Virus record (IMG/VR): IMGVR_UViG_3300033145_003233
Span: 483,944-547,943 of that record
DNA: 64,000 nt
Direction: 5' to 3' (one strand)
The translations under genes and the position numbers were made by a program. The notes beneath the pieces were generated by a model. That model saw only the letters and a program-made list of their open reading frames with translations. It searched no databases and was not told the origin of the DNA. Positions 19,229 to 64,000 of this stretch are shown piece after piece (the first letter of the stretch is position 1; each line of letters begins with the position of its first letter).

Positions 19229-19283
19229 AGGGGGAGTTTCATAAAAAAATGTGATAAAATTACAAATAAGGGGATATAAAGTA

Positions 19284-19319
19284 GGACAAAAGACAGCTAT
19301 ATTAAGCCGCCTTTTGTCC
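19284..19319 (-). terminator. Hairpin terminator after tail tube gene
   Basis: 15-bp stem GGACAAAAGGCGGCT/AGCTGTCTTTTGTCC that pairs fully with G-U wobbles only on the minus strand. Confidence 0.7.
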
Positions 19320-19348
19320 TGCAATAATTCTATTAAATTAAACCAACC

Positions 19349-20455: not shown

Positions 20456-20524
20456 CTTTTTATCTCCGTTTTATATAATTAGTAATATTTATCTTAATTT
20501 TAACTTATTTATTCTAAACTAATC

Positions 20525-20959: not shown

Positions 20960-21189
20960 TTTATTTCTCCTGTTTCTTGTAAATTTTATTTAACCATTTA
21001 ATATTTCAAAAATTATTCTTTATTACCTTTTTCTTATTTTTAATTATTTTTCCAATAGAGCATAACCATAATTAATCAATATAAATATACGATCTTCTGC
21101 TAGAATATCCTTTTTTTTATTTCTCCGCATTTTCAATCTACTTCATCTAATTCCATCTTTTATTATTATATCCTTTTTTATTTTTTAAA

Positions 21190-45492: not shown

Positions 45493-45522
45493 AAAATCCA
45501 CACCCAATTGAATGTGGATTTT
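45493..45522 (-). terminator. Rho-independent terminator
   Basis: AAAATCCACATTC/GGGTGTGGATTTT stem followed by a U-run on the minus strand. Confidence 0.75.
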
Positions 45523-45667: not shown

Positions 45668-46174
45668 TTACACCCTATTAAGATTGCCCCTATGAATCAT
45701 AAATTCTACTGTCCTAACTTCACTAGCCAAACCTCGTGCATATGTTCTGGCCTTAAAAATAGTATTATCGTGACCAGATAGATTTCTCCTAATCCGCACT
45801 TGTCCAGTATATAAATTAGCTTTAGTTCTAACAGGATCTTTGCCATTAACAGTATAATATGTTTCTGAATTCCAGTTCATACCACCCGAAGATGCTTCTG
45901 TCTTTCCTATAATATCGTCTGTAGAACGATTCTCATAGGTAGTAGTTTCAAACTTACTATCTGGAGTCAACGTAACATAAACATCTCCATCAAAAATCAG
46001 AGAGTCTCTCCTTCTAGCAGTAGGACTACCAGCTATAGATCCCTCAACTACTAACTGGGTATTAATAGTAGTTGTAGAAGTAGGATCAATGACCCCATCT
46101 GTACCAATAAAAGCCCCATTTAAAACTATAGTTGGGGGTTCAACCCTAGTGCTAGAATGATTAATATTAGGCAT
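45668..46174 (-). CDS. Protein with chitobiase/Fn3-associated (CHB_HEX_C-like) beta domain
   Basis: TYYTVNGKDP...LYTGQVRI...TIFKART..SEV. Confidence 0.6.
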   Translation of the reverse strand: MPNINHSSTRVEPPTIVLNGAFIGTDGVIDPTSTTTINTQLVVEGSIAGSPTARRRDSLIFDGDVYVTLTPDSKFETTTYENRSTDDIIGKTEASSGGMNWNSETYYTVNGKDPVRTKANLYTGQVRIRRNLSGHDNTIFKARTYARGLASEVRTVEFMIHRGNLNRV

Positions 46175-46262: not shown

Positions 46263-46964
46263 TTAAACATATATCACATTTATATTGTTATTTGACCTAA
46301 TCTTTCTAAATGTAGTATATAAATGAAAATTTATATTTGGAAAAGCATCACATAAATGATAAAATGTTTTTATCATCCCCTCTCTAAATCCGTTATAAAT
46401 TTCTGCCCCTTTCTTTTTTGGCAGATCATGTTCCTCTCTAGCGAAATAAGGTTTTACATTTCTATTATAAAAATCCACCCCTATAATATATATGTTTTTA
46501 GGATTAAAATAAGTAGCAAACAAAATAGATGCCATTCCTGTAGAATAAAGACTAGATTCATCATCTATTTTATTTATCAATTCACAATGTCTTTTATTAT
46601 ATCCCACCACTTTTAAATCTGGAAACTTTTTAACACATTCTTTATAATCGTCAGTACCTTCTTGAGATTTTAGCTGAATATTTTTAATACCCAACTTCTG
46701 ACAATGATATTTTGAAGTTCTATATCTATCATACTGTATCACGCACAACACAATATTTTTGCCCAGCAAGTATTTCCCTATATAATCTAAAGAATTATTG
46801 AATTCTCCCGCCAAATAACAATAATTAAATTTTTTATAGCACAAATCTAGTCTAGACACAGAAGGACCTCTTGCTATAACTCCTATATTTTCTGCTTTAA
46901 AAAAATCAGAATCTTTGTACTGGAGAGAAGCACGATATATTTTATCTTCAAATGTTAGCATCAA
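46263..46964 (-). CDS. Sialyltransferase-like (CstII/DUF115-like) nucleotide-sugar enzyme
   Basis: IGVIARGPSV...STGMASILFATYFNPKNIYIIGVDFY. Confidence 0.6.
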   Translation of the reverse strand: MMLTFEDKIYRASLQYKDSDFFKAENIGVIARGPSVSRLDLCYKKFNYCYLAGEFNNSLDYIGKYLLGKNIVLCVIQYDRYRTSKYHCQKLGIKNIQLKSQEGTDDYKECVKKFPDLKVVGYNKRHCELINKIDDESSLYSTGMASILFATYFNPKNIYIIGVDFYNRNVKPYFAREEHDLPKKKGAEIYNGFREGMIKTFYHLCDAFPNINFHLYTTFRKIRSNNNINVIYV

Positions 46965-46970
46965 AATATT

Positions 46971-47804
46971 TTATGTTGTGATATCTAAACTTTCTTTAAT
47001 AGCTAGAATCAATGCTTGATCAGCAGAAAGCTCACCAGCACTAACCATCTCTACCAATTTATCTTCCTTCTCTTCGGTTGTTAGACCAACAAATAATGGG
47101 TGGTACTGTTGATATAATGCTTCCATCTCTTCCTCTGTATACTTCCTCAAGATAAATGGGTCGATAGCTCCATGGGCAGAAGACGATGGAGGAGCCGAAG
47201 ACGAAGACGAAGAAGATAATGAAGACGAAGACGAAATCGAAGATGAAGAAGACGAAGAAGATATCGAAGACGAAGATGAAGACGATGATGAAGATAGCGA
47301 AGACGATGATGAAGATGAAGAAATCGAAGATGAAGAACTTGAAGACAACGAAGATGACGAACTTGAAGACGACAATGAAGACGAACTTGAAGACGACAAT
47401 GAAGACGAACTTGAAGATGACCTTGAGGACGAAGACGAAGACGAACTCGAAGAAGATAATGACGAAGACGAAGATGATGAACTTGAAGAAGATAATGACG
47501 ATGACGAAGATGAAGAACTTGAAGAAGATAATGACGAAGATGAAGAACTTGAAGAAGATAATGACGAAGATGAAGAACTTGAAGAAGATAATGACGAAGA
47601 TGAAGAACTTGAAGAAGATAAACTTGAAGATGACGATGATGACGAAGAAAGCGAAGATGAAGAAGACAGAGATGACGAAGAAGACGAAGAGGATGAAGAT
47701 GAGGAAGAAGCAACCCCAGGATAAAAATTAAATGTTTTAGTTGCCGCACCTTCACTGATAGTTAAAACTCTTCCATCAAGAAAAAATGTTCTTGGCCCTG
47801 CCAT
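46971..47804 (-). CDS. Poly-serine protein with conserved C-terminal ~40-aa domain
   Basis: ~175-residue Ser tract including a perfect 30-nt repeat. C-terminus EEKEDKLVEMVSAGELSADQALILAIKESL resembles the end of 50905..52551. Confidence 0.75.
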   Translation of the reverse strand: MAGPRTFFLDGRVLTISEGAATKTFNFYPGVASSSSSSSSSSSSSLSSSSSLSSSSSSSSSLSSSSSSSSSLSSSSSSSSSLSSSSSSSSSLSSSSSSSSSSSLSSSSSSSSSSSLSSSSSSSSSSSRSSSSSSSLSSSSSSSLSSSSSSSSLSSSSSSSISSSSSSSSLSSSSSSSSSSISSSSSSSSISSSSSLSSSSSSSAPPSSSAHGAIDPFILRKYTEEEMEALYQQYHPLFVGLTTEEKEDKLVEMVSAGELSADQALILAIKESLDITT

Positions 47805-47913
47805 AATCTATTCCACCTGTCTTTTCACTTACTTTATAATTATCCCTTAGATTAATAATTTATAAAATAAATCATTATATCCTTGTTTTTTGTTTATTTT
47901 AACCATAAAAATA

Positions 47914-48456
47914 TTATGCTTCTTCCGTCCATGCTCCATTTCTGGCTATTGTAGCCCAATCTCCATTTTCATCGGAAATCAATGTTATACAAGCCCCGAT
48001 ATTACTGTTACTCTTATACTTACTAGCTGTTTGACCACTTAAGTCTCGAATTGTTTTACCTGCCTCTGGATAAATCCGAATCTCTTGGGCGACCTGCACA
48101 GCAAATATCAGTTCAATCCCTTCTCCCGGAGAAGGAGGTAGGTTAAACTTAATTCCAAAATTTGCCCCTAAATTAGTAAAAACTGATTGATGATCTCCTA
48201 TATCTAAATCATGTGGAGAACCTACCTCTGTGTATGATTTTATTACTTTAGTTCCATGAGCTAATGGAAATCCATATGTTAGCTGCCATAAGGTATAAGT
48301 TCCAGCAACCGTATCTTTAAAAGTTAAATTACCAGAGTCATCTTCCCATATTCTAGTATTTGTATCAAAGAAACATACTCCATCCGATCCATTAACATAT
48401 AAATCAGCATTAGTAATTAAAAAGCCATATATAGTTGTAGGATTTAATTCTGCCAT
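47914..48456 (-). CDS. Virion fibre/adhesin module A protein (start refined to MAELN)
   Basis: Paralog of 48456..48992 and of the N-terminus of 50905..52551 (LTFKD.VAG.YTL.QL; ITLI.D..G.W.TIA..G.W). Confidence 0.65.
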   Translation of the reverse strand: MAELNPTTIYGFLITNADLYVNGSDGVCFFDTNTRIWEDDSGNLTFKDTVAGTYTLWQLTYGFPLAHGTKVIKSYTEVGSPHDLDIGDHQSVFTNLGANFGIKFNLPPSPGEGIELIFAVQVAQEIRIYPEAGKTIRDLSGQTASKYKSNSNIGACITLISDENGDWATIARNGAWTEEA

Positions 48457-48992
48457 TAAGGTCCCTCCGTCCACGTTCCTTCTTTAGCTATTGTTCCCCA
48501 ATTCCCATCCCTATCAGCAATTAAGGTGATAGTTTCACCTATAACATTTGCTGTTTTATAACTATCTATAGTTTGCCCACTATCATCTTTAATAGAACGT
48601 CCAGACCCAGGATATATAAACAAACTTTGAGCCGCTTGCACTGCGAAAATAAATTCAATACCATCTACCACAGCAAGAGGAAGATAAAAAGAAACGCTGT
48701 TAATAGCCCCAAGGTTTGTAAGAATATTACCCGTTTGCCTTGCCTGTAAATTAACAGGAGAATCTGACTCTGTGTAGGATTCTATTATTCTACTCCCTTG
48801 AACAGAAGGATTTCCTGTTAAAAGTTGCTGTAGGGTATATTCTCCAGCAACTGCATCTTTAAAAGTTAAATCAACATTTTTCCAAATCTTAGTATTTAAA
48901 TCATTGAAACATATACCATTTGACCCCTTAATATATAGATCATCATTGCCAAATAATGATCCCTGTATAGTTGTAGAAGATAATATCGCCAT
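48456..48992 (-). CDS. Virion fibre/adhesin module A protein
   Basis: Same paralogous module; TAATG stop/start overlap with next gene. Confidence 0.65.
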   Translation of the reverse strand: MAILSSTTIQGSLFGNDDLYIKGSNGICFNDLNTKIWKNVDLTFKDAVAGEYTLQQLLTGNPSVQGSRIIESYTESDSPVNLQARQTGNILTNLGAINSVSFYLPLAVVDGIEFIFAVQAAQSLFIYPGSGRSIKDDSGQTIDSYKTANVIGETITLIADRDGNWGTIAKEGTWTEGP

Positions 48993-49011
48993 AATTATTT
49001 TATATTAACCA

Positions 49012-49126
49012 TTAATCCCTAATTTTTCTTGAATAGCTATATAAACTGCTTCATAAGCTGTTATTTTTCCGTCCCCGACCATCTTAATAATAAAGGTTTC
49101 TTTTTCAGAGTTGGTTAAATCTACTT
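49012..49126. repeat. 115-bp exact duplication of 50915..51029
   Basis: Identical sequence; encodes the C-terminal domain in frame in 50905..52551 but out of frame here. Confidence 0.9.
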
Positions 49127-50860
49127 ACTTAGGCTTGAACTACTTTGGCTTGAGCTACTTGAACTTGAGCTACTTACACTAGAACTACTTGAGCTAGAGC
49201 TACTTAAACTTGAACTACTTGAGCTTGAGCTACTTAAGCTTGAGCTACTCAGGCTAGAACTACTTGAGCTTGAGCTACTTGAGCTTGAACTACTTGAACT
49301 GCTTGAGCTACTTTCAATAGGTAGACAACCATTCAAATTTTCAGTTCCACACTCAATTGATGGATTATAGCAATTAAACAGACCATTAACCTCATTGCCA
49401 GTTAGTGCTCTATTAAATAATATTACATTATCAATTTTACCATTGAATAAACCATAATTATAAGGATCAGAGCCAACAACAAAAGCTCCTCCAGAATCAG
49501 CCAAACCATTAGTAGGAGCAGCACTTGCATCATAAGAACTACCTGCTACTGTATTAACATATATTTTACTATTTGTGCCATCATATGTAGCAACAATATG
49601 ATACCAGTCTCCAAGATTATCAGCAGCAAAATCGAACTTAGCTGCTTCATCATAATTATTCCATACATAATTATTTGTTACCCAGAATCTAATTTGATCT
49701 GTAGACAAGGTAGTGGCAGCACTTGCCCAATAAACAGCCCAACCATTGTTCCAACCACTATCAGTTACTTTTGAAACAAAAACTTCTTCAGAATTTAAAG
49801 CATCTGCATTCATCCAGAAAGAAACAGACATAGCGCCAGTTAATTCTATAGAAGAATGAGTTCCCATATTTATAGCATCATTATTGCCTGGAGTAAGGTC
49901 AACTGCATTACCAGTGACTCCATCAACATATGTCTCAACTCCAGAGTTCCCAGTATATTCACCATTATTGCTAGGATTAATTGAATCTGTTAAATCATTA
50001 TTAAATTTCCACTGAGCAAGAGCAGCATCTGAGACATCCCAAGTTCCAAATTCACAAGAAGAACTTGAAGAACTTGAAGAACTTGATAAACTTGAAGAGC
50101 TTGAAGAGCTTGAAGAACTTGAAGCGCTTGAAGCAGTCGGATATCCAGTAACAATCTTTACGGAAGCACCTGTTGTTTTTGTTATTATTTTGCCTCCATC
50201 AGTACGAATCCTTAATCCAGGAGTGGCCCCAGTGTAGATATAAGAATCTCCGAATAAAATAGCGGTCTCTGCATCAATAACATCCCTGCCATCTATAGTA
50301 AATGGCCACCAATGAATTAGCTTTCCGCTACCAGCTCCGACCGTCATGAATTGAGAATTCCTGCCAAGATTATATAAGGAGGTAATCTCACTTTCTGTTA
50401 AATCATCATTAAATAACATTACATCGCAAATATAGCCACTCCATGGGTCCGTCTGGTGAGAACTTGCCCCTATCGACAAAGGGGTTAGCGTACTAGTAGC
50501 GGGATCTACCGCACCCGTAGCTTCTCCATCTATATCTCCATCAACATATATTTTATGATCTGCCCCATCGTATAAAACAACGATATGATGCCAAAGATTA
50601 TCACATACATTAACATTGTGTTCTAAACTTCCAGCATTAACAACAACTTTAATATATCCATCACTAGTTGTTAGTATGTCCCATGCTAGATTACCAGGGT
50701 CATCCCAAAGCCCATATCCAAAAATATATCGCCCTGTAAAGCTCGTCTTGAACCATGCAGCAAAAGATCTGGACGAAGCACCGGCTATGTCATCACCAGT
50801 ATAATCAGGAGTATAGGCGTAATCAGCGCCTCCTGGCAAAACTAAATATCCTCTACTCAT
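49121..50860 (-). CDS. Two-LamG-domain protein with poly-Ser linkers
   Basis: LamG motifs (WHHIVVLYDG..KIYVDG; WYHIVATYDG..KIYVN..FNGKIDNVILFNRAL) separated and followed by Ser tracts. Start refined to MSRGY (SD AGGTG). Confidence 0.85.
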   Translation of the reverse strand: MSRGYLVLPGGADYAYTPDYTGDDIAGASSRSFAAWFKTSFTGRYIFGYGLWDDPGNLAWDILTTSDGYIKVVVNAGSLEHNVNVCDNLWHHIVVLYDGADHKIYVDGDIDGEATGAVDPATSTLTPLSIGASSHQTDPWSGYICDVMLFNDDLTESEITSLYNLGRNSQFMTVGAGSGKLIHWWPFTIDGRDVIDAETAILFGDSYIYTGATPGLRIRTDGGKIITKTTGASVKIVTGYPTASSASSSSSSSSSSSLSSSSSSSSSSCEFGTWDVSDAALAQWKFNNDLTDSINPSNNGEYTGNSGVETYVDGVTGNAVDLTPGNNDAINMGTHSSIELTGAMSVSFWMNADALNSEEVFVSKVTDSGWNNGWAVYWASAATTLSTDQIRFWVTNNYVWNNYDEAAKFDFAADNLGDWYHIVATYDGTNSKIYVNTVAGSSYDASAAPTNGLADSGGAFVVGSDPYNYGLFNGKIDNVILFNRALTGNEVNGLFNCYNPSIECGTENLNGCLPIESSSSSSSSSSSSSSSSSSSSLSSSSLSSSSSSSSSLSSSSSSSSSVSSSSSSSSSQSSSSLSK

Positions 50861-50904
50861 TATTCTCACCTATTATTTTAAATAATATCTTTATTTTTTA
50901 ATCC

Positions 50905-52551
50905 CTAATTCTTTTTAATCCCTAATTTTTCTTGAATAGCTATATAAACTGCTTCATAAGCTGTTATTTTTCCGTCCCCGACCATCTTAATAATAAAGGT
51001 TTCTTTTTCAGAGTTGGTTAAATCTACTTCAGTAAATACAAAGAATTGACCATGAACTGATTCTTCACTTGAACTACTTGAACTACTTAGGCTTGAACTA
51101 CTTGAGCTAGAGCTACTTAAACTTGAACTACTTAGGCTAGAACTGCTTGAGCTAGAGCTACTTAGACTTGAGCTGCTTGAGCTACTTAGACTTGAGCTAC
51201 TTAGGCTAGAGCTACTTGAGCTAGAGCTACTCTGACTTGAACTTGAACTTGAACTTGAACTTGAGCTTGAGCTTGAACTCGAACTAGGTAATAGAGGCAA
51301 ACAACCAGACAATTCTTCTGTTCCACATTCAATTGATGGATCTTGACAATTATAAAGACCTATAACTTCAGTACTGGTTAACGCTCTATTAAATAATATT
51401 ACATTATCAATTCTGCCATCAAATGTTTGATATGTATCCACCATGTCCCCAATACCCATTGCCGCCCCAGAATCAGCTAACCCTCCAGGGTTGCCAGCTG
51501 AAACATCATAAGGACTACCTGCTACTGTATTAATATATATTTTACTATTTGTTCCATCATATGTAGCTACAACATGATACCAGTCTCCTGTATTGTCAGC
51601 AGGAAAATCAAATTTAGCAGCTTCAAGATAATTAACCCATACATAATTATCTGTCACCCAAAATCTAACTTGATTAGGACTTGTTGCATTTGTCCAATAA
51701 ACAACCCACCCATTCTGCCAATTAGCATCTATTTTTGAAATCATTATCGGTTCAGATGTTAATGTATCTGCATTTATCCAAAAAGAAACGGACATAGCAG
51801 CAGTTAATTCTATAGAGTGATGAGTTCCTACATTTATGTGCTCTAAATTCCCAGGATTAAAATCTACTGCATTGCCAGTAACACCGGCAGCATATGTTTC
51901 AACAGTACCAGTTCCAGCATATTCACCATTATTACTAGGATTAATTGAATCTGTTAAGTCGTCATTAAATTTCCACTGAGCAACTGCTGCATTAATAACA
52001 TCCCAGGAACCGAACTCACAACCAGCCGATTCCCATGTTCCATTTTTAGCTATTGTAGCCCAATCTCCATTCTCGTCAGAAATTAATGTGATACAAGAAC
52101 CTATAGTAGAAGATGTCTTATACGCTCCAGTAACTACCCCACTATCATCCCTAATAGTAGAATTGGCCCCAGGGTCAATCCTAAATTCTTCTGACTCCTG
52201 AACTTCAAATGTAAAAACTATTCCTTCCGAAGCTGCTTTTGGCAAAGATAATATTATCAAATCATTTGCCCCAAGATTACTATGTACACTCCCTGATTCT
52301 TCTTCAGTTAGAATATCATTATTAGTATGGAATTCGATTCTTTCCCCCTCCTGATAAGATGGGCTTCCTACAATAAGTTGTTCTAACGTATATGTTCCAA
52401 CCACAGCATCTTTAAAAGTTAAATTAGAAGCTTTACCTTCCCATATTTGGGTATTGATATCATCAAAATATATATTATTTGGACCTTTAACATATAGATC
52501 TTCCGCGACTATTAAATCCCCGTATGTAGTTGTGGTTCTTAATTTAGCCAT
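50905..52551 (-). CDS. Module A + LamG + poly-Ser + C-terminal domain protein
   Basis: LamG domain closely similar to the second LamG of 49121..50860; start refined to MAKLR (TAATG overlap). Confidence 0.85.
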   Translation of the reverse strand: MAKLRTTTTYGDLIVAEDLYVKGPNNIYFDDINTQIWEGKASNLTFKDAVVGTYTLEQLIVGSPSYQEGERIEFHTNNDILTEEESGSVHSNLGANDLIILSLPKAASEGIVFTFEVQESEEFRIDPGANSTIRDDSGVVTGAYKTSSTIGSCITLISDENGDWATIAKNGTWESAGCEFGSWDVINAAVAQWKFNDDLTDSINPSNNGEYAGTGTVETYAAGVTGNAVDFNPGNLEHINVGTHHSIELTAAMSVSFWINADTLTSEPIMISKIDANWQNGWVVYWTNATSPNQVRFWVTDNYVWVNYLEAAKFDFPADNTGDWYHVVATYDGTNSKIYINTVAGSPYDVSAGNPGGLADSGAAMGIGDMVDTYQTFDGRIDNVILFNRALTSTEVIGLYNCQDPSIECGTEELSGCLPLLPSSSSSSSSSSSSSSSSSQSSSSSSSSSLSSSSLSSSSSSSLSSSSSSSSSLSSSSLSSSSSSSSSLSSSSSSSEESVHGQFFVFTEVDLTNSEKETFIIKMVGDGKITAYEAVYIAIQEKLGIKKN

Positions 52552-53312
52552 TATAGCTGTTCTTTTATCTCTCCAAAAACGTACCAATTATCTAAATTTA
52601 ATTGCATATTTGTCATAGAGGCTGCGTCAGTATCGAACATTTTTGATAGCACTCCTATTTCTGGAAGAGGAGATTCAATATGAACATAAGCATCTCCTTG
52701 AATAACACCATGATTAAGACCCTTTTTATCACTAGCATCTACAGTAAAAGGCCACCAAGAAATTAGATTATCATATGTAGAAAGATCTGATACCTGATTA
52801 TTATTAGGGTTCCTGCCTAAATCATAAATCTCTTGAATGTCTGATTGCGTTAAATACTCATCAAAAAACATTACATCAGAAAAATTCCCTTCAAAATCAG
52901 AAGATAAAACAGTCGATACACCCATAACTACAGGGTCAGAAGAACCATCTGAAGCTAATGCACTTAAAGCACCTGAATTATTTGCAACCCCAGCATCAAT
53001 ATATAGATATGCAGTATCATCACTAGTATCAAAAGCTACTGCAACAAAGGTCCAAATGTTAGTAGGTATAATATCTACAGAATCTATAAGGCCTACATGA
53101 GAAGCTACTCTAAGCTTGTTTGACGAATTAATAATAATAAAACGAAAATGAGATATACCACTATCTCCATAATCTAAAATACAACTGTTTTTAGTGGAAT
53201 TCCAGTATACCCAAGCACAAACTGTCCTTGATGCGTTCCCCGAAACACCTGTATAACTAGTACTAATATAATCATCTGAACCCTGTAAAACCAAATATCC
53301 ACTATTACTCAT
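52551..53312 (-). CDS. LamG (concanavalin A-like) domain protein
   Basis: WTFVAVAFD..YLYIDAG..FEGNFSDVMFFD; paralog of the N-terminal LamG of 49121..50860. Confidence 0.85.
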   Translation of the reverse strand: MSNSGYLVLQGSDDYISTSYTGVSGNASRTVCAWVYWNSTKNSCILDYGDSGISHFRFIIINSSNKLRVASHVGLIDSVDIIPTNIWTFVAVAFDTSDDTAYLYIDAGVANNSGALSALASDGSSDPVVMGVSTVLSSDFEGNFSDVMFFDEYLTQSDIQEIYDLGRNPNNNQVSDLSTYDNLISWWPFTVDASDKKGLNHGVIQGDAYVHIESPLPEIGVLSKMFDTDAASMTNMQLNLDNWYVFGEIKEQL

Positions 53313-53324
53313 TATTTTTCCTAT

Positions 53325-54008
53325 TTAAACCAATTTTTTATTATATATTCTAAAATCAAACATCAAACCATTAAAAGCAGTTAAAGCAGAACTATCAGGA
53401 TTATCTCCTATCCTATTAACATCTATATCTCCAGCAAGCACAACTTCTCCAACATGAACAGCATCTAAATAAAATTGAAAAACATTATTGCTAGTATGTG
53501 TAATAACAAAATTAAACCATTTATTAACAGGACAAGAATCTGTTAAATTCACCGCCTCATTACTAGCTGTAGTAGTATAAATAGCTAACTGAGCAGGACT
53601 TTTGAAACTTATTGCTCCACTAGGACTAGTTATAGTGTGATCATCTTGATTACCAGCTATACCATCATCGCCATATGATATTTTGTATCCCCAAAATGAC
53701 CAAGACCATTCTGCCCCATCATTACACTCAACAATAGAATCTAAATTAATTTTATCATTATTATAATTAGTAAAATCATAACACCCTCTATCTCTTGGAG
53801 CAGTATAATTCAACATGAGATCAGCACTAGGAGATGTCACTGTCCCATGATTCATATTGCCGCTTAAATCTCTAGCATGGCCGTCCATAGGCCAATATCC
53901 TATTAGTGCATCTGTAGGACCAACCTCAGAAAAAGAATCGCTGTATATATTCCCCTGTTTATCAATATAATTATTTTTGTCAGAAGCTAAATGTTCTCTT
54001 AACACCAT
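53325..54008 (-). CDS. LamG domain protein
   Basis: LIGYWPMDG...WFNFVITH...FNGLMFDFRIYN. Confidence 0.8.
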   Translation of the reverse strand: MVLREHLASDKNNYIDKQGNIYSDSFSEVGPTDALIGYWPMDGHARDLSGNMNHGTVTSPSADLMLNYTAPRDRGCYDFTNYNNDKINLDSIVECNDGAEWSWSFWGYKISYGDDGIAGNQDDHTITSPSGAISFKSPAQLAIYTTTASNEAVNLTDSCPVNKWFNFVITHTSNNVFQFYLDAVHVGEVVLAGDIDVNRIGDNPDSSALTAFNGLMFDFRIYNKKLV

Positions 54009-55309: not shown

Positions 55310-55370
55310 ATTTCTCCCCAAAAAAAAGATTCTATACTATTTATTTTCCACTTTAACAACATAAAAACCT

Positions 55371-57692: not shown

Positions 57693-57695
57693 GCC

Positions 57696-58487
57696 TTATC
57701 TCCACATATACAACATTTGGATATGATTATTAGCCCCCAGGAATAAAGCATGGGTATGAAAACCTGAAGATAAAAATCTATTCAATAATTGATCTCTCCT
57801 ACTCTTATCAAAGTAAAACATAAAATTATGATATTCCATACATATTTTATTTATTTTCAAAAGATTATGATCAGAGATACCTTTAAAGATGTCTAATTCC
57901 GACCCTTCTGCATCAATCTTTAAGAAATCTATATGAGATTTAATATTATCTAAAAAATAATTGAGAGAAATACATCCGATAATTTGTGTCTCTCCTGTTT
58001 TTGTATTATTAGTATCATTATTTAAAATAGTATGCCCACCAGTATATTTATCTATATTTAAAAAACTCACTTTATTTTCATTAGAAAACCCAAAATTATA
58101 AACTTTTTGATTACTAGATTGATTTCTTTCCAGGCAATAAAAACTTTTTATCTCTGGCTCAAATGAGAATATTTCTCTTCCACCATTCATATAAGCATAC
58201 CTACTGAATATCCCAACATTAGCTCCTATATCAACAACAATATCTCCTTTTTCTACCTTGCATTGATTATAAGAATAATTTTCCTGCTCAAATATTTCTG
58301 CATATATGCAACAAACTGTTTCATAATCTTTTCGATTATCCCATACAAATCCCATGGATTCTTCATATAAATTCATTTTCTTCAAAAAACCATCATCTGA
58401 TACAATCACAAAATCATCATTAGATATAATTGGAGATGGATCTACCACCCTAGTATCTCTATAAACATTTTTTAATTCATCGTACAT
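57696..58487 (-). CDS. FkbM-family methyltransferase
   Basis: VVDIGANVGIFS...FSFEP...IDFLKIDAEGSE. Confidence 0.9.
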   Translation of the reverse strand: MYDELKNVYRDTRVVDPSPIISNDDFVIVSDDGFLKKMNLYEESMGFVWDNRKDYETVCCIYAEIFEQENYSYNQCKVEKGDIVVDIGANVGIFSRYAYMNGGREIFSFEPEIKSFYCLERNQSSNQKVYNFGFSNENKVSFLNIDKYTGGHTILNNDTNNTKTGETQIIGCISLNYFLDNIKSHIDFLKIDAEGSELDIFKGISDHNLLKINKICMEYHNFMFYFDKSRRDQLLNRFLSSGFHTHALFLGANNHIQMLYMWR

Positions 58488-61400
58488 TATTTTTCTATTC
58501 CCAACAAAGACAATATTCTTTCAGCATCTTTCTCATTCTCTCCGGTTAGAAAATCAACATTTTCTTTTTCATCATATTTGCCGCAATAAGTTTCTAGATT
58601 ACGCATCAAAACAGGCATCTTCCAACCTAACGCCTCTTTTATAACAACTGGATTACACTCTACCTTAGAAGGAAACAAAAACAAATCCATAGACCCATAA
58701 AAGTTATCTACATCATTTCTTTCTCCCCATATAACACAATTAGAAGATTTATTTTTCATTAAGGGAGACCAATAATGTGCAAAATTACTAGCCTGATTAC
58801 CAACAAAATGAAACTTGATATTCTTATCTTTAAGTAAGAGAGCTATATTAAAAATTTCTTCCTGATTTTTACCAGGAGTAAACAATCCGACATGCAGAAC
58901 ATGGAGGTCACTTGGATTTAATCCTAATTTTTTTAAAGTATCTTCCCTAGAAAGCCTCTCTTTTAACTCTATGGGATATTCTATTACTTCCATAGGAACA
59001 TCAAAATTTTTATACTTTTTTAAATGCCAAGGACTAACAAATAAAAATTTATCTGGTATCCATCTTTTATGAATATCTGGATTAAAAGTAGAATTATGAG
59101 ATGTCTCATATATTGAATATTCTCTATACTCATCATATAACTCTCTACCCAACTCATCAGGAAAACCACTAAAATCAAACAACTCTGGAGCTTCTTCAAT
59201 ATGAACTATATCTGGATTAATTTTTTCTATTATATCTATTAATTTTAATCTATTTCTTACATGAGTTTCTTGATCTTCGTTCAAATTACCTAAAGTATAG
59301 AATTTATCTTCCCCCACCATCTCTATAATAGCATTTCTCTGCACTATAAATCCAGGACCATAAAAAGTGAATTCGACAACATAAATATTAAAATCATCTT
59401 TCATAAGTTCTATTGTTTTTCTTAAAAATTCCGGCATCCCCCCAGTTGAAAGATGTGGAGCAACAAATAAAATTTTTCTCCTATTATCGTTTTCTCCCGC
59501 ATCAATAATATCAAATTTATGTAACAGATCATTATCTTTAACCAAAGATTCTATATACTCTCTTTTCTCTCCACCTGATAAACTTTTTATTTTATCAGAT
59601 ATTATATCATCAGGGTTATTATTTACGACAGTATAAACTTCCTTTAATTTATTAATATTCTCCATAAAAGGAGATCTTGAATATGTTTTTGCTCTATCTC
59701 GAAGAAAATCTATTTCGGTATAAACGAGAAAAACCACATCAAAATCATGGATATATTCAAGAGAATCATTTCCTATCATAATTAATTTTTCAAAACTCCT
59801 CATCCGTTCAAGATGTTCCTTTGTTATATGAGAAAACTCATCACTCATATTCTCTTTAGTAGGTTGAGGATATCCCTCTCCTAAAGAATTATATCCATAC
59901 TCTAAAGTTCCTAAATCATCAATAATAACAAAATCTTTTAAATTATTATTTTCTGCAATAACTTTTCGTATGCATGATTTACCTGAGCTACTTTTCCCGA
60001 TAATAGCTATTTTATTATTCCTACTACAAACATCCAATATTTTTTCTTCTATATTTTTAATATCAACCGTATCTCTAGAACATCTAAAAAACGGTCTACT
60101 ATTAGAAACATCTCCCTTATAGACTATCTCTGTAAAATCTGTATAATCTAAAATATTTCTCATATATTTTTTATAATGTTGAGAATGATGGCCTTCAAAA
60201 TACATAACTTTTTTAGTTCTATTAGATGCTTTGGTTAGTCCCCCATACCTATTTTGTAATTCAATAGTATCTATAACAGAAAGATATAAAACAACATCAA
60301 AATCCGTCAATTGATGCCAGCACAAAGGGCTATCAATATCATCAATATAAAAATCAATATCTAAATTTAATTTTTCATTTAATTCAATAGCTTTTTTGAT
60401 AGCTGTTAAGTCATAATCAATTCCTACTACTTTTTCTGCCCCCCAATTTTTAGACTGAATTGACATTTGCCCCATATTACACCCTACATCCAAAACTGAA
60501 GCTCCGTCAAAATCAGCATTATTAAAATACTGCACCCTGGAAACAACAGAACGCCCCCCTTTGATATTTAAATCTGGTATTTCATGATATCCCGTAAACC
60601 AATTATCACGTTTTGTATAAGGTTGACAATGTTCGTCATTTTCAAAGATTGTACGGGAATAAACTAAATCCCCATCTTCCCCAAAAATTTCAAATATAAT
60701 ACCTTTTAGAGTATGTTTGAGTCTATTCGGCATAAACCAATAAGAGCTTCTGGGATGTAAAATAAATTTATCACTATAAAAATTAGTGTACTCTCCAATC
60801 CCCCTAAGAGCCACAAGATGTCTTTCTACTCCAAAATCAACAAGAGAATGAAAACTTACTTTGATGCGATCAGGATTCTCTAAAAACTCACATTTAATTT
60901 CCATTTTATCTCTAGCATCATAAAATTTTCTATTTCTTAAAATATCTCCAACCTTTTTTAAAACCTGATCTACATTAGGATGACACCCAAATTCGCTCTT
61001 ATTTTCTAAGCAACCTTTTAGTGGTGGTATGCCATGAATATTCCCATGTTCTTCTAACCCATATTTTATATTAGAGGCACAGAATAAATCACAATCCCCC
61101 AAAACATAATCATATTTATAATCTTGACTTCCTCCTCTGAAGGGAGATCTAAATTTAGGATTAATAGAACTGCCTAGCTGAATAATATTTGCATCAGTAG
61201 TGCCAGCCAAATGTAATATACCACTATCCATAACAACTACACATTCTGATTTATTTATAATATGCCAACACTGAGATAAATTAGTTTTATTTAACAGATT
61301 CAACCCAATAGAAATATTGATATCAAAAACAAATTTATCAGGATCATTTGATTTATGACAAAAATCCCTACCGATAGCAACCACAGCAATATTATTATCA

Positions 61401-61867
61401 TTCAATTCATTAATCAATTTTTGCCATTTATTTTTCCCCCAACTTCTAGATTCCCAGGTCATAGTAGGATGAACCACAGCATACCTATCCGGTAAATTGT
61501 CCACCAACTCATATTTATTAGGATAAAAATCTAAAGAACATTCTGAAGGCAAGAGCTGCATACCCATATAGGCAGCATGATATTGCACGATATGCATTCT
61601 ATTATGTTTTAATTCCCCATCCTCTTTAAATAATTTCTGCTCTGGCGTGCCTATTATATGAATAAGAAATTTATTAGATTCTTCATTATAATTTTTATTT
61701 GAGATATTAAAATTATGCTTTACATATGGGTTGTTATCAAAAACCTCTGGGAGATAAGAAAAAACAGTTATTTTTTCATCATATGTCTCATATAACTTTC
61801 TAAGGATGGGAGTAGAGCATAATATATCCCCCATTCCGACACAATCAATCCACAAAGCTTTATCCAT
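58487..61867 (-). CDS. Multidomain GT9 + class I methyltransferase + P-loop + GT4 glycosyltransferase
   Basis: GMGDILCSTP...MDSGILHLAG (GT9); VLDVGCNMG (SAM); IIGKSSSGKS (Walker A); FVAPHLSTGGM...DLFLFPSKVECNPVVIKEAL (GT4). Confidence 0.85.
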   Translation of the reverse strand: MDKALWIDCVGMGDILCSTPILRKLYETYDEKITVFSYLPEVFDNNPYVKHNFNISNKNYNEESNKFLIHIIGTPEQKLFKEDGELKHNRMHIVQYHAAYMGMQLLPSECSLDFYPNKYELVDNLPDRYAVVHPTMTWESRSWGKNKWQKLINELNDNNIAVVAIGRDFCHKSNDPDKFVFDINISIGLNLLNKTNLSQCWHIINKSECVVVMDSGILHLAGTTDANIIQLGSSINPKFRSPFRGGSQDYKYDYVLGDCDLFCASNIKYGLEEHGNIHGIPPLKGCLENKSEFGCHPNVDQVLKKVGDILRNRKFYDARDKMEIKCEFLENPDRIKVSFHSLVDFGVERHLVALRGIGEYTNFYSDKFILHPRSSYWFMPNRLKHTLKGIIFEIFGEDGDLVYSRTIFENDEHCQPYTKRDNWFTGYHEIPDLNIKGGRSVVSRVQYFNNADFDGASVLDVGCNMGQMSIQSKNWGAEKVVGIDYDLTAIKKAIELNEKLNLDIDFYIDDIDSPLCWHQLTDFDVVLYLSVIDTIELQNRYGGLTKASNRTKKVMYFEGHHSQHYKKYMRNILDYTDFTEIVYKGDVSNSRPFFRCSRDTVDIKNIEEKILDVCSRNNKIAIIGKSSSGKSCIRKVIAENNNLKDFVIIDDLGTLEYGYNSLGEGYPQPTKENMSDEFSHITKEHLERMRSFEKLIMIGNDSLEYIHDFDVVFLVYTEIDFLRDRAKTYSRSPFMENINKLKEVYTVVNNNPDDIISDKIKSLSGGEKREYIESLVKDNDLLHKFDIIDAGENDNRRKILFVAPHLSTGGMPEFLRKTIELMKDDFNIYVVEFTFYGPGFIVQRNAIIEMVGEDKFYTLGNLNEDQETHVRNRLKLIDIIEKINPDIVHIEEAPELFDFSGFPDELGRELYDEYREYSIYETSHNSTFNPDIHKRWIPDKFLFVSPWHLKKYKNFDVPMEVIEYPIELKERLSREDTLKKLGLNPSDLHVLHVGLFTPGKNQEEIFNIALLLKDKNIKFHFVGNQASNFAHYWSPLMKNKSSNCVIWGERNDVDNFYGSMDLFLFPSKVECNPVVIKEALGWKMPVLMRNLETYCGKYDEKENVDFLTGENEKDAERILSLLGIEK

Positions 61868-61952
61868 AATTATTCCATAAAAGATGCTTATAATATCAAT
61901 TATATAATCGACATTATAAGCATCGGAAATTAATTAATTACTGACTAAGATA

Positions 61953-64000
61953 TTATAAGAAATTAAAATCTATAGTTTCAGTAACTTCGTTATAAACCAT
62001 TTCTGCTTTAGAGTCAAAAGGATCGCTTTGTTCTTTCATTTGAAAAGCATCTGATTCGATATATCCTAATATATTTAAAGTTCCGCCCCAATCTCCAGAT
62101 GGACCTGACATAGGATCAACAACAAGATCATTCCCATCGAAATAAATACTACCACTATTGATTGTTCCCATAAAAATTCTTTTTCCATCAGCAAAGAACA
62201 TATGATCATCATCATCTACAATAATGCCCGTTTCTTCTAATTCTCCTATTGAGGGGTTATTATATACTGTTTTAACTAATCTATTATCATTAAAAACAGT
62301 AAGTGTAGCTCCACCACCTCCTGCTTCACCTGCTCCATCAGCCCCATCTTGACCAGAGCTTCCGCTACTTCCAGAAGATCCCGAACTTCCACTACTTCCT
62401 GAACTTCCAGAACTTCCTGATGTTCCACTACTACCTGAAGTTCCTGACGAACCACTACTACCTGAACTTCCTGATGTTCCACTACTACCTGAAGTTCCTG
62501 ATGAACCACTACTACCTGAGCTACCAGAAGATCCAGAAGAACCTGATGTTCCACTACTACCTGAACTTCCACTACTACCTGAAGAACCACTGCTGCCAGA
62601 AGTTCCACTACTTCCAGAACTACCTGAAGTCCCACTACTACCTGAAGTTCCTGACGAACCACTACTACCTGAACTACCTGAAGAACCGCTACTACCAGAA
62701 GTTCCTGAACTTCCTGAACTTCCACTACTAACTACCAGAAGTTCCTGAACTTCCACTACTACCTGACGAACCTGAACTTCCACTACTACCAGAAGTTCCT
62801 GAACTTCCGCTACTGCCAGAAGAACCCGAACTACCTGATGTCCCGCTACTTCCCGATGTTCCTGACGAACCACTACTACCTGAACTACCTGAAGAACCGC
62901 TACTACCAGAAGTTCCTGAACTTCCACTACTACCTGAAGAACCTGAACTACCTGAGGTTCCACTACTACCAGAAGTCCCTGAACTTCCACTACTACCTGA
63001 ACTTCCTGAACTACCTGAGGTTCCACTACTACCTGATGAACCTGAAGAGCCACTACTACCTGAACTTCCACTACTACCCGAAGAACCCGAACTACCTGAT
63101 GTTCCCGATTCACCTACAGCACTGGGATCTGCTTCTATAAGAGTAGCATTTACCCAAGCTAAACCATTCCACTTTAAGTACTCATCAATTTGTATATTAG
63201 TAAGAGTAACATCACACAAATCTTCTACATTTAAACAACTTGAAGTAAGATTAAAAATTGTAGTGCAATAATAATTACCACCTATTTCAGTTACTGTGAT
63301 TTCGTCACCATTAACTAAACGAGGTGTAGCACTATTTAAGTCTTCATCTAGTGAAGGATTGTTACCTGCTATTAAGCAAATAACATTTGTAGGTGTTCCA
63401 CCTGGGGTATCTAAGTTACATAAAATAATATTACCTTCAGGAGCATCTTCCTGACAATAAGCTTTCTTACCATACGCAGAAACACCTGAGCTACCTGAAG
63501 AGCCTGAACTACCAGAAGAACCTGAACTTCCACTACTACCTGAAGTTCCTGACGAACCACTACTACCTGAACTTCCTGATGTTCCACTACTACCTGAGCT
63601 TCCTGAAGAACCTGATGTTCCACTACTACCTGATGTTCCCGAAGAACCACTACTACCAGAAGAACCACTACTACCTGAACTTCCTGATGTTCCCGAAGAA
63701 CCGCTACTTCCAGAACTTCCTGAGCTACCTGATGTTCCGCTACTACCTGAAGTTCCTGAAGAACCGCTACTTCCAGAACTTCCACTACTACCTGATGTTC
63801 CACTACTCCCTGAAGATCCACTACTACCTGAACTACCTGAAGATCCTGAGCTTCCTGATTCTCCTACAGCACTAGGATCTGCTTCCGTAAGAGTAGCATT
63901 AACCCATGCAGAACCATTCCACTTTAAGTATTCATCTAGTTTAAGATCAGTTAAAGTAACATCATCTAAATCTTCCAAATTGAAAGCTTCAGCAGCAAGA
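61953..64000 (-). CDS. Ser/Gly/Thr-repeat (SSG/TSG) virion fibre-like protein, 5'-partial, with a frameshift at ~62730
   Basis: Frame is open from the right edge to TAG 62728; the repeat continues in another frame to IDFNFL* 61953. Duplicated spacer EDLxDVTLT..DEYLKWNG.AWVNATL.EADPSAVGESG. Confidence 0.75.

What the first reader, a model, noticed from the sequence alone, without database searches (positions are those of the whole stretch)
46263..64000. Probable phage-encoded serine O-glycosylation system for poly-Ser virion proteins
Seen: an Aah/TibC-type heptosyltransferase with the four-Cys motif (55371..57692), a GT9-MTase-P-loop-GT4 fusion and an FkbM methyltransferase lie between a Ser/Gly-repeat fibre gene and a LamG array whose proteins carry long poly-Ser tracts (46971, 49121, 50905). 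A sialyltransferase-like gene flanks the other end. Established: Aah/TibC transfer heptose from ADP-heptose onto Ser residues of autotransporter adhesins; serine-rich repeat adhesins are glycosylated by adjacent GTs; virion glycosylation has been reported in mycobacteriophages. Inference: the phage uses host LPS precursors to build a mucin-like, possibly methyl-capped glycan coat on Ser-rich stalks that display LamG lectin domains.
Basis: partly seen in the sequence, partly recalled or inferred. Interest (0 to 1): 0.88.

Follow-up and report, generated by a model that had tools for sequence, protein, structure and literature searches.

The report
Phage fibre O-heptosylation gene cassette
A huge phage carries a TibC/Aah-type protein serine-heptosyltransferase, with extra sugar- and methyl-transferases, set among serine-rich fibre genes; the same enzyme sits beside Gly-Ser/Thr-Ser collagen-like fibre genes in many other uncultured phages, which suggests a common but undescribed way of sugar-coating phage fibres.

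Summary
Window 55371-57692 (-) encodes a 773-aa protein. Residues 96-457 match NCBIfam TIGR04414 (Aah/TibC O-heptosyltransferase) at 325 bits against a cutoff of 200, and match solved TibC at E=1.5e-59. The catalytic Asp, all four ADP-heptose contact residues and all four iron-finger Cys are kept. A GT2 domain is fused to it.

Next to it lie an FkbM methyltransferase, a GT9-methyltransferase-P-loop-GT4 fusion, five LamG proteins, three poly-Ser proteins, a GT42 (sialyltransferase)-fold protein and a (G-S/T-S)n collagen-like fibre gene.

- Among 83 other phage loci with this enzyme, poly-Ser tracts appear in none. They appear in one further syntenic relative found separately.
- 79% of loci of at least 15 kb carry a large proline-free collagen-like ORF. 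70% of its triplets are GSS or GTS.
- Control loci show 0-3%.
- Ten loci also carry HldA/HldC-like ADP-heptose activation genes.

Most likely this is a virion-fibre Ser-O-heptosylation and glycan-elaboration cassette. The collagen-like fibre is the conserved substrate and the poly-Ser linkers are lineage-specific extra targets. No modification has been shown. I found no description of this in the literature searched.

The parts
61953..64000 (-). Collagen-like fibre gene made of (G-S-S / G-T-S)n runs separated by small globular modules. It reads as two pieces: 62728-63999, open to the contig end, and 61953 to about 62735. An in-frame TAG and a frame change lie at about 62728-62735.
   Evidence: PF01391 Collagen at 5.3e-37 and 7.5e-16. 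Triplets are GSS 65 and GTS 17 of 85 in one piece, and 32 and 9 of 43 in the other. Frame break read. Window end equals contig end.
61883..61924 (-). Terminator-like hairpin (19-bp stem followed by a T run) between the fibre gene and the glycosyltransferase genes.
   Evidence: The total number of such sites in the region is no more than chance, so this is only suggestive.
58487..61867 (-). 1126-aa fusion. It contains an LPS-type GT9 domain (aa about 11-243, GMGD motif), a class-I SAM methyltransferase (aa about 439-542), a Walker-A P-loop region (aa about 615-770, family unassigned) and a GT4 domain (aa about 900-1121).
   Evidence: Pfam and NCBIfam hits. Only a weak ABC_tran hit for the P-loop part and no PDB match. 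The GT9 part aligns to the TibC profile only weakly, at 22.5 bits.
57696..58487 (-). FkbM-family methyltransferase (263 aa).
   Evidence: PF05050 5.9e-21, TIGR01444 3.3e-21, phrog_8156.
56322..57407 (-). Aah/TibC-family (BAHT) protein Ser-O-heptosyltransferase domain of the 773-aa protein (aa 96-457). It comprises a beta-barrel, a GT-B catalytic core and a four-Cys iron finger.
   Evidence: TIGR04414 at 325 bits against a cutoff of 200. TibC structures at 1.5e-59. Equivalents of D110, T226, K230, R286, W305 and C339/342/358/370 are all kept; position 300 is Ser, as in AAH.
55593..56321 (-). GT2-family (GT-A fold) glycosyltransferase domain of the same 773-aa protein (aa 458-700). The second Asp motif reads G-D where the family has D-D.
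   Evidence: 996 relatives found. 30 of 40 relatives hit PF00535. The profile hits GT2 structures. The AF2 model has pLDDT 93 and matches RmlT, WrtF, SpsA and K4CP at E about 1e-9. Motif.
55413..55592 (-). Second copy of the TibC N-terminal beta-barrel, at the C-terminus of the 773-aa protein (aa 701-760). A degenerate N-lobe fragment without the catalytic Asp lies at aa 3-74 (57471-57686).
   Evidence: hmmsearch with the A1 profile: 25.3 bits (7e-10) and 18.5 bits (7.8e-8).
52551..55321 (-). Three LamG/ConA-like proteins: 440 aa with two domains, 227 aa and 253 aa.
   Evidence: PF13385 at 7.5e-39, 3.9e-11 and 3.4e-18. PHROG 'virion structural protein' families 701, 18802 and 3545.
50905..52587 (-). 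560-aa protein. Order of parts: N-terminal domain shared with the two small paralogues, LamG, poly-Ser tract (51067-51285), short C-terminal helical module. The true start is probably the internal ATG that aligns with the paralogues.
   Evidence: (phrog_8510).
49121..50869 (-). 582-aa protein. Order of parts: LamG, poly-Ser (50057-50131), LamG, poly-Ser running to the C-terminus (49133-49312).
   Evidence: PF13385 at 3.6e-39 with two stretches, phrog_8510, tracts.
47914..48992 (-). Two paralogous small proteins (178 and 186 aa) that resemble the N-terminal domain of the 560-aa protein. No family assigned.
46971..47804 (-). 277-aa protein. A 32-aa head is followed by about 170 residues of poly-Ser with occasional Leu/Ile (47193-47708) and a 70-aa C-terminal module. 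That module is shared with the 560-aa protein and with the 983-aa protein of relative L200.
   Evidence: Weak SHOCT-like hit at E=0.0097.
46263..46964 (-). 233-aa GT42-fold (Cst-I sialyltransferase-like) protein. It is conserved at the edge of the variable glyco/fibre island in syntenic relatives.
   Evidence: 19 homologues without a Pfam family. AF2 pLDDT 87.9. Foldseek 2P2V at E=7.2e-5, TMq 0.49. Synteny in L200 and L201.
45668..46174 (-). 168-aa protein with an Fn3-associated / CHB_HEX_C-like domain. It is a conserved downstream neighbour, followed by a 13-bp-stem terminator-like hairpin at 45493-45522.
   Evidence: PF13287 at 1.9e-5. Same neighbour in L200. Hairpin.

Best explanation
This is a phage-encoded protein O-glycosylation cassette for virion fibres. 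It lies in the structural-gene region of a roughly 548-kb phage.

Inferred steps:
1. The TibC/Aah-type domain of the 773-aa protein transfers heptose from ADP-heptose onto Ser hydroxyls of phage fibre proteins in the host cytoplasm before assembly.
2. The fused GT2 domain, the GT9 and GT4 domains of the 1126-aa protein, and possibly the GT42-fold protein extend the sugar.
3. The FkbM and SAM methyltransferases O-methylate the glycan.

The substrate class conserved across phages is the proline-free (G-S/T-S)n collagen-like fibre encoded directly upstream. The poly-Ser linkers of the LamG proteins are plausible extra substrates specific to this phage lineage.

Shown here: family membership and intact catalytic residues of each enzyme, gene order, and cross-phage co-occurrence. 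Inferred: the acceptor proteins, the order of sugar additions, and the biological role. That role could be stiffening or stabilising fibres that lack proline, or protecting them from proteases and shielding them.
For: Enzyme:
- TIGR04414 at 325 bits against a cutoff of 200. TibC structures at 1.5e-59.
- In TibC, Asp110 is the base, Thr226/Lys230 bind the beta-phosphate, Arg286 binds adenine, Trp305 binds heptose O4, and four Cys bind iron. TibC modifies Ser and not Thr (PMC4358343).
- All of these residues are kept in the window protein. D, K, W and the four Cys are kept in 76-77 of 77 phage homologues.

Context:
- All genes lie on one strand with gaps of 0-128 bp, among PHROG 'virion structural protein' LamG genes.
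- In about 30 other loci the homologue sits directly upstream of the tail sheath gene.

Module recurrence:
- Phage homologues are fused to GT4, FkbM, SAM-methyltransferase, GT25 or GT32 domains.
- GT4 is present in 52 of 86 loci and FkbM in 31 of 86.
- L013 repeats the set: GT4+FkbM, methyltransferase, TibC-like, collagen-like, phrog_8510 LamG-like proteins.

Substrate association:
- A collagen-like ORF (at least 60 aa of G-X-Y runs) is present in 48 of 83 TibC-like loci and in 37 of 47 loci of at least 15 kb. It lies within 300 bp in 10 loci.
- The association holds in 34 of 47 sub-lineages clustered at 70% identity.
- Of 9,797 triplets, GSS makes up 38% and GTS 32%. The Y position is Ser in 78%. 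Pro is under 0.5%.

Controls:
- 0 of 21 capsid-centred phage loci.
- 3 of 80 bacterial-genome TibC-family loci, and all three are low-GC MAG contigs.
- Within 80 kinase-centred phage loci, 7 of 18 with TibC against 2 of 62 without (Fisher p=2.7e-4).
- Microcystis phage Mel-JY01 has one large collagen-like ORF in 190 kb, and it lies 1.7 kb from its TibC-like gene.

Donor:
- HldA-like kinase and HldC-like adenylyltransferase genes lie beside the TibC-like gene in 10 phage loci. Their best NCBIfam hits are rfaE_dom_I and rfaE_dom_II.

Poly-Ser:
- Syntenic relative L200 again has TibC-like, LamG, a 983-aa protein with Ser-rich linkers and the same C-terminal module, and the GT42-fold gene.
Against: - No chemistry has been done. 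Nothing shows that any Ser is modified.
- Known family members act on a strand-loop-strand motif of folded autotransporter beta-helices. Neither a collagen-like helix nor a disordered poly-Ser run resembles that motif.
- Poly-Ser tracts are absent from all 83 other TibC-like phage loci.
- About 20% of long loci have no collagen-like neighbour. These include L201, a syntenic relative of this phage, within its visible 19 kb, and L004/L012.
- The loci are the 80 best hits and are phylogenetically related, so the counts are not independent events.
- No heptose-pathway gene lies in the 64 kb of this phage available, nor in Mel-JY01. The host is unknown.
- The HldA/C-like hits fall below NCBIfam's curated cutoffs.
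- Arg286 is replaced in 44 of 77 phage homologues, though not in the window's.
- The fibre gene is truncated and frame-broken in this assembly.
- GT9 and GT4 domains are classic LPS-core enzymes.
Confidence: 0.6

Rival explanations
1. Host-surface remodelling. The heptosyltransferases, GT4, GT2 and methyltransferases act as auxiliary genes on the infected cell's LPS core or capsule, or on a host adhesin. The purpose would be to block superinfection or change the receptor. Their position among fibre genes would be incidental.
For: GT9 and GT4 are typical LPS-core families. The 1126-aa protein's GT9 domain resembles WaaC/F/Q more than TibC. A published huge-phage survey reads a phage heptosyltransferase as an LPS auxiliary gene (PMC10747093). 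Some TibC-like loci are pure glycosyltransferase islands with no fibre gene nearby (L004).
Against: The 773-aa protein passes the equivalog cutoff of the protein-specific family and fails the LPS heptosyltransferase models, scoring 15-28 bits against cutoffs of 170-467. There is strong and specific linkage to G-S/T-S collagen-like ORFs and to tail sheath genes across sub-lineages. The genes lie in a late, structural, co-directional block.
Confidence: 0.15
2. The poly-Ser tracts of the LamG proteins are the main, defining substrate, giving a mucin-like coat. The collagen-like gene is only a neighbour.
For: About 310 Ser-tract residues lie in three proteins within 9 kb of the enzyme. They are kept by mixed codons. 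The tracts recur as linkers in syntenic relative L200 together with a TibC-like gene. TibC modifies Ser and not Thr.
Against: No poly-Ser tracts in 83 other TibC-like phage loci or in 80 kinase loci. The cross-phage partner is the collagen-like repeat. Poly-Ser linkers work unmodified in other systems (own knowledge: Cellvibrio glycoside hydrolases).
Confidence: 0.15
3. The cassette glycosylates something other than a fibre. Candidates are phage DNA, as with T-even glucosyltransferases, or another virion protein such as capsid or sheath.
For: Phage glycosyltransferases are often DNA-modifying (own knowledge; the view is also cited in PMC10202952). In about 30 loci the gene abuts the tail sheath gene. 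In L002 it lies near the head genes.
Against: None of the domains belongs to a known DNA glucosyltransferase family. The BAHT catalytic residues and the iron finger (acceptor-binding in TibC) are conserved. FkbM-type sugar O-methylation fits a glycan and not DNA.
Confidence: 0.07

Closest known systems
Bacterial autotransporter heptosyltransferases (BAHT: TibC, AAH/Aah, BimC-type; TIGR04414)
   Same: The same family by the curated HMM cutoff. It has the same beta-barrel plus GT-B core plus four-Cys iron finger. The catalytic Asp and the ADP-heptose contacts are identical. Position 300 is Ser, as in AAH, which accepts both ADP-L,D- and ADP-D,D-heptose.
   Different: It is encoded by a phage. 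It is fused to a GT2 domain, an extra beta-barrel and a degenerate N-lobe fragment. No autotransporter lies nearby; the neighbours are collagen-like and poly-Ser fibre proteins. Phage sequences largely separate from true bacterial ones in a tree, with 32-37% identity to them against 42-56% among phages.
Mycobacteriophage virion glycosylation (glycosyltransferases next to capsid and tail genes; Freeman et al. 2023, own knowledge; mentioned in PMC12582341 and PMC11256854)
   Same: Phage-encoded glycosyltransferases placed among structural genes and modifying virion proteins in the cytoplasm before assembly.
   Different: The enzyme families, hosts and acceptors differ. In mycobacteriophages the acceptors are C-terminal extensions of capsid and tail tube proteins. 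No heptose, BAHT enzyme or collagen-like acceptor is involved.
Glycosylated collagen-like surface filaments: the Bacillus exosporium protein BclA (GXT repeats O-glycosylated on Thr) and Mimivirus fibrils and collagen modified by virus-encoded enzymes (own knowledge)
   Same: A collagen-like G-X-Y repeat with a hydroxy amino acid in the repeat, encoded beside dedicated glycosyltransferases and methyltransferases, forming an outer hair-like layer.
   Different: The repeats here are GSS/GTS with almost no Pro. The predicted first sugar is heptose, added by a BAHT enzyme. The carrier is a tailed phage.
Serine-rich repeat glycoproteins of Gram-positive bacteria (GtfA/GtfB plus accessory Sec; PMC5207161, PMC6973325)
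   Same: Long Ser-rich tracts encoded next to several glycosyltransferases that build an O-linked glycan stepwise.
   Different: The initiating enzyme is not GtfA/B. No aSec genes are present. The repeats are pure poly-Ser or G-S-S, not SASESAS-type dipeptide repeats.

Membership tests
BAHT / TIGR04414 autotransporter O-heptosyltransferase | Scores above the curated equivalog cutoff over the full model | tested here: met
   325 bits against a cutoff of 200; model positions 6-374 of 374.
BAHT / TIGR04414 autotransporter O-heptosyltransferase | Catalytic base Asp110 and donor contacts Thr226, Lys230, Arg286, Trp305 | tested here: met
   All five are identical in the alignment to TibC.
BAHT / TIGR04414 autotransporter O-heptosyltransferase | Four-Cys 1Fe-0S iron finger (Cys339/342/358/370) | tested here: met
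   All four are aligned and conserved. They are kept in 76 of 77 phage homologues. Iron binding itself was not tested.
BAHT / TIGR04414 autotransporter O-heptosyltransferase | N-terminal flattened beta-barrel and beta-hairpin thumb with two hydrophobic tip residues (dodecamer contacts) | tested here: inconclusive
   The barrel region aligns. The thumb tip is Tyr-Met where TibC has Phe-Val. The oligomeric state cannot be tested here.
BAHT / TIGR04414 autotransporter O-heptosyltransferase | Adjacent autotransporter (beta-helix passenger) as substrate | tested here: not met
   No autotransporter was found in the window or in the phage loci. The neighbours are collagen-like, LamG and poly-Ser proteins. 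This is a feature of context, not of the enzyme fold.
BAHT / TIGR04414 autotransporter O-heptosyltransferase | Transfers heptose from ADP-heptose to protein Ser | not testable with these tools
   Needs an enzyme assay or mass spectrometry.
GT42 sialyltransferases (Cst-I/Cst-II type), for the 233-aa protein | GT42 fold | tested here: met
   The only significant Foldseek PDB match is 2P2V Cst-I (E=7.2e-5, probability 1.00, TMq 0.49, rmsd 6.3). The match is moderate.
GT42 sialyltransferases (Cst-I/Cst-II type), for the 233-aa protein | Sequence-family match and catalytic His / CMP-sugar contacts | tested here: inconclusive
   No Pfam or NCBIfam hit apart from a sub-threshold MptE-like hit (E=0.0078). 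A conserved ExHD stretch exists, but I did not map it onto the Cst-I active site.
GT2 (GT-A) glycosyltransferases, for aa 458-700 of the 773-aa protein | Family HMM, GT-A fold and acidic motifs | tested here: met
   30 of 40 homologues hit PF00535. The profile hits GT2 structures. Foldseek E is about 1e-9. The first acidic motif, DEDD, is kept. The second reads G-D where the family has D-D, so activity is likely but not certain.
Gram-positive serine-rich repeat glycoprotein (SRRP/aSec) systems | GtfA/GtfB initiating pair and SecA2/SecY2 export genes | tested here: not met
   None was found among the Pfam, NCBIfam or PHROG hits for the region.

The most novel reading that the evidence does not exclude
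A widespread and so far undescribed phage system. A BAHT-family iron-finger heptosyltransferase is usually fused to elongating glycosyltransferases and methyltransferases, and sometimes comes with phage-encoded ADP-heptose activation genes. It heavily O-glycosylates proline-free (G-S/T-S)n collagen-like virion fibres, and poly-Ser linkers in this lineage. In this reading the sugars take over the helix-stabilising and protective role that proline or hydroxyproline plays in ordinary collagens.
Probability: 0.35. Interest if true: 0.82.

Novelty: new variant of a known kind. Interest (0 to 1): 0.68.

Why it matters
- Virion glycosylation in tailed phages is documented experimentally only for mycobacteriophages. 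This finding would extend it to a different chemistry (Ser-O-heptose), a different acceptor (collagen-like fibres) and many environmental phages. At least 77 distinct full-length homologues were recovered, out of 578 or more candidate hits in IMG/VR.
- It would give the BAHT family a second natural substrate class. The family is currently known only as a virulence-associated modifier of autotransporter adhesins.
- It would explain how Gly-Ser-Ser repeats that lack proline could form stable fibres.
- It would change how phage heptosyltransferases and glycosyltransferases are annotated. They are currently read as LPS-directed auxiliary genes.
- It bears on receptor binding, protease resistance and antibody recognition of phage fibres.
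- One cultured carrier, Microcystis phage Mel-JY01, makes the idea directly testable.

Tried and rejected
- DNA similarity of the glycosyltransferase block to GenBank phages gave no match.
- Literature searches found no paper on phage TibC-like enzymes or glycosylated collagen-like phage fibres. PMC10202952 turned out to be irrelevant.
- I searched for poly-Ser in the related loci. The only extra hit, on the L002 minus strand, is the shadow frame of an acidic scaffold-like gene.
- E. coli GmhA and GmhB found nothing in any phage locus. HldE found nothing in the window or in Mel-JY01.
- The HldA-like kinase scan did not return the window's own contig among the best 80. Whether this phage makes ADP-heptose remains open.
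- The Mel-JY01 'cytidylyltransferase-like' protein gave only a marginal PF01467 hit.
- No family could be assigned to several parts: the P-loop region of the 1126-aa protein, aa 245-440 of that protein, the two small paralogues, and the C-terminal module of the poly-Ser proteins. No homologue of that module was found in the allowed length range.
- The word-indexed search found no protein of similar length sharing the C-terminal half of the 773-aa protein. The exhaustive search then found 996 relatives.
- The capsid-centred control comes from one phage lineage only, so I added the bacterial-locus and kinase-locus controls.
- A jackhmmer domain census drifted for the short N- and C-terminal queries, because they contain partial TibC repeats. 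I did not use it for those.

Full report
**Origin and layout.** The window is the last 64 kb of a 547,943-bp IMG/VR contig, IMGVR_UViG_3300033145_003233. GC content is about 33%, and almost every gene lies on the minus strand. Several features mark it as a huge phage. PHROG tail families match at 19349-22110. There is a 5139-aa ORF. A LAGLIDADG endonuclease and an S8 peptidase are present. A patatin-like gene has its nearest non-Wolbachia-phage relative in a 634-kb uncultured phage. The TibC-like gene has relatives in the 735-kb and 636-kb phages. The phages above 634 kb were predicted to infect Bacteroidetes (PMC7162821). The host of this phage is unknown.

**Checking the observation.**
- The 773-aa product of 55371-57692 matches NCBIfam TIGR04414 (hepto_Aah_TibC, an equivalog model) at 325 bits against a cutoff of 200. 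It scores only 15-28 bits on the LPS heptosyltransferase models.
- It matches the TibC crystal structures 4RB4/4RAP at E=1.5e-59 over residues 94-456.
- The TibC structure paper names Asp110 as catalytic base, Thr226/Lys230 on the beta-phosphate, Arg286 on adenine N1 and Trp305 on heptose O4. Pro300 (Ser in AAH) sets D,D versus L,D selectivity. Cys339/342/358/370 hold the iron. The enzyme modifies Ser and not Thr (PMC4358343).
- In the window protein all of these are kept. Position 300 is Ser, as in AAH. The thumb tip is Tyr-Met.
- The FkbM methyltransferase, the GT9/methyltransferase/P-loop/GT4 fusion, the five LamG proteins and the collagen-like Ser/Gly gene are confirmed by Pfam, NCBIfam and PHROGs.
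- The poly-Ser tracts use four or five different Ser codons from both codon boxes. They join in-frame conserved N- and C-terminal modules. They are therefore real coding features selected at the protein level.
- The 'sialyltransferase-like' gene has no sequence family. A confident model (pLDDT 87.9) has one significant PDB match, C. jejuni Cst-I of family GT42.

**Additions and corrections.**
- The 773-aa protein is a mosaic. It has a degenerate N-lobe fragment (aa 3-74), the full TibC-like unit (aa 96-457), a GT2 domain (aa 458-700) and a second copy of the TibC beta-barrel (aa 701-760).
- The fibre gene runs off the contig end. It contains an in-frame TAG with a frame change near 62728-62735, inside the repeat. 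This may be an assembly error. I searched the two pieces separately.
- The 277-aa poly-Ser protein has no LamG domain.
- Long-stem hairpins with T runs at 61883-61924 and 45493-45522 bracket the block from the glycosyltransferase genes to the Fn3-associated gene. The number of such sites is not above chance.

**Testing the interpretation by co-occurrence.**

*How common is the enzyme in phages?*
- A profile of nine phage homologues (A1) found at least 578 candidate relatives in IMG/VR. The best 80 are full-length at 42-49% identity.
- GenBank phages hold only four: Microcystis phage Mel-JY01 and three huge uncultured phages.
- In the genome collection, true bacterial members (Burkholderiales, Bradyrhizobium, Acetobacteraceae) are 32-37% identical. 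The closer hits are low-GC MAG contigs that look like phage DNA.
- In a tree the viral and bacterial labels are strongly clustered, with 8 changes against 52 after shuffling.

*What sits next to it?*
- Poly-Ser tracts occur in none of the 83 other loci.
- 48 of 83 loci, and 37 of 47 loci of at least 15 kb, hold a large ORF with at least 60 residues of G-X-Y runs. The ORF is often 1,000-3,000 aa long. It lies within 300 bp of the enzyme gene in ten loci.
- The link holds in 34 of 47 sub-lineages clustered at 70% identity.
- The repeats are of one particular kind. Of 9,797 triplets, 38% are GSS and 32% are GTS. The Y position is Ser in 78%. Proline is under 0.5%. The window's fibre gene has the same make-up.

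*Controls.*
- 0 of 21 capsid-centred phage loci.
- 3 of 80 loci around bacterial family members, and all three are phage-like MAG contigs.
- Within 80 phage loci chosen on an unrelated gene, 7 of 18 with a TibC-like gene against 2 of 62 without (p=2.7e-4).
- In the complete 190-kb Mel-JY01 genome, the single large collagen-like ORF lies 1.7 kb from the TibC-like gene. GenBank mis-annotates it as minus-strand hypotheticals.

*Other recurring partners.*
- The enzyme is repeatedly fused to GT4, FkbM, SAM-methyltransferase, GT25 or GT32 domains.
- L013 repeats the window's full component list, including phrog_8510 LamG-type virion proteins.
- About 30 loci place a stand-alone copy directly upstream of the tail sheath gene.

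**The sugar donor.** Ten phage loci carry two small genes next to the TibC-like gene. Their best matches are the kinase and adenylyltransferase halves of E. coli HldE (rfaE_dom_I and rfaE_dom_II). The scores are below the curated cutoffs. The kinase alone has at least 368 relatives in IMG/VR. Trp305 and Lys230 are universally conserved. Together these make ADP-heptose the most likely donor. Arg286 is replaced in 44 of 77 phage copies, though not in the window's. No GmhA or GmhB was found in any phage locus, and no pathway gene in the window or in Mel-JY01.

**The poly-Ser proteins.** Two syntenic relatives of this phage were found through the GT42-fold gene.
- L200 has a TibC-like gene, two LamG proteins and a 983-aa protein. 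That protein reads LamG-LamG, poly-Ser, metallophosphoesterase-like domain, Ser-rich linker, and the same C-terminal module as the window's 277-aa and 560-aa proteins.
- L201 has GT4-methyltransferase and methyltransferase-PIG-L-TibC fusions plus a UDP-galactopyranose mutase. It has no Ser-rich gene in view.
- In this lineage the Ser tracts are therefore inter-domain linkers, within a variable glyco/fibre island bounded by the conserved GT42-fold gene.
- They are reasonable extra acceptors, but they are not what the enzyme family tracks across phages.

**Most likely mechanism.** The cassette acts in the cytoplasm and late in infection. The BAHT domain puts heptose on Ser of the (G-S/T-S)n fibre, and perhaps on the poly-Ser linkers. 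The GT2, GT9, GT4 and possibly GT42-fold enzymes extend the glycan. The FkbM and SAM methyltransferases cap it. Every step after family assignment is inference. A heavy sugar coat could stabilise or stiffen a collagen-like helix that has no proline. Glycosylated Thr does this in some animal cuticle collagens (own knowledge). It could also protect fibres and linkers from proteases.

**Rivals.** The main rival is the conventional reading of phage heptosyltransferases as LPS-directed auxiliary genes (PMC10747093). The protein-specific family assignment and the fibre linkage argue against it. The rivals and what would refute each are listed in the Rival explanations section.

**Novelty.** The enzyme family and the idea of virus-encoded virion glycosylation are both known. 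The combination is not described in anything I could find. That combination is a phage BAHT clade, G-S/T-S collagen-like partners, fused tailoring enzymes and occasional ADP-heptose genes. I rate it a new variant of a known kind. It is moderately to highly interesting because it is widespread and directly testable.

Noticed in passing
window 23194-24219 (-): A 341-aa protein matches Pfam PF25216 'Volactin' (an actin-family protein named in haloarchaea) at E=4.4e-59 and 201 bits. This would be an actin-like protein encoded by a huge phage.
   Followed up: no
window 2525-17944 (-): A single 5139-aa ORF with no Pfam hit in either half. It lies next to tail-protein PHROG hits and is probably a giant structural or fibre protein.
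   Followed up: partly
window 35250-36182 (-): A 310-aa patatin-like phospholipase (phrog_25573, 2.3e-99). It is 47-50% identical to the patatin gene of Wolbachia phage WO and 40% identical to a gene in the 634-kb uncultured phage LR745206.
   Followed up: partly
window 62728-62735: The collagen-like repeat carries four extra bases relative to the neighbouring units. They create an in-frame TAG and shift the G-S-S frame. This is either an assembly error in the repeat or a real break.
   Followed up: partly
L030 11429-12561; also L007, L016, L022, L025, L069, L074, L075, L077, L089: Split HldC-like adenylyltransferase and HldA-like kinase genes lie next to phage TibC-like genes. The kinase has at least 368 relatives in IMG/VR, and most are not near a TibC-like gene. 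Phage-encoded heptose activation may therefore be common.
   Followed up: partly
L008 (Microcystis phage Mel-JY01, PP395634) 2-3049 (+) and 9143-9983 (+): The GenBank annotation places minus-strand 'hypothetical protein' CDSs over what reads as a collagen-like G-T/S-S ORF of over 1000 aa on the plus strand. A second, smaller such ORF lies downstream of the TibC-like fusion.
   Followed up: yes
L201 7249-8250 (-) and 3946-7254 (+): In a syntenic relative the island holds a UDP-galactopyranose mutase and a methyltransferase-PIG-L deacetylase-TibC fusion instead. The glycan built probably differs between close relatives, with galactofuranose in this one.
   Followed up: no
L002 3292-4497 (+): A tubulin/FtsZ-like gene with a GGGTGGG motif lies between an HNH gene and the portal gene, in a small contig that also carries a TibC-methyltransferase-GT2 fusion.
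   Followed up: no
window 39418-40434 (-) and 43217-44041 (-): A LAGLIDADG homing endonuclease and a subtilase (S8) peptidase. Both are conserved in the same order in relative L201, and the peptidase also in L200.
   Followed up: partly
L167 (256-kb contig binned as Lentimicrobiaceae MAG) 7625-20003: Four S/T-rich collagen-like ORFs surround a TibC-like gene on a low-GC 256-kb contig. It is probably a jumbo phage binned with a Bacteroidota genome.
   Followed up: no
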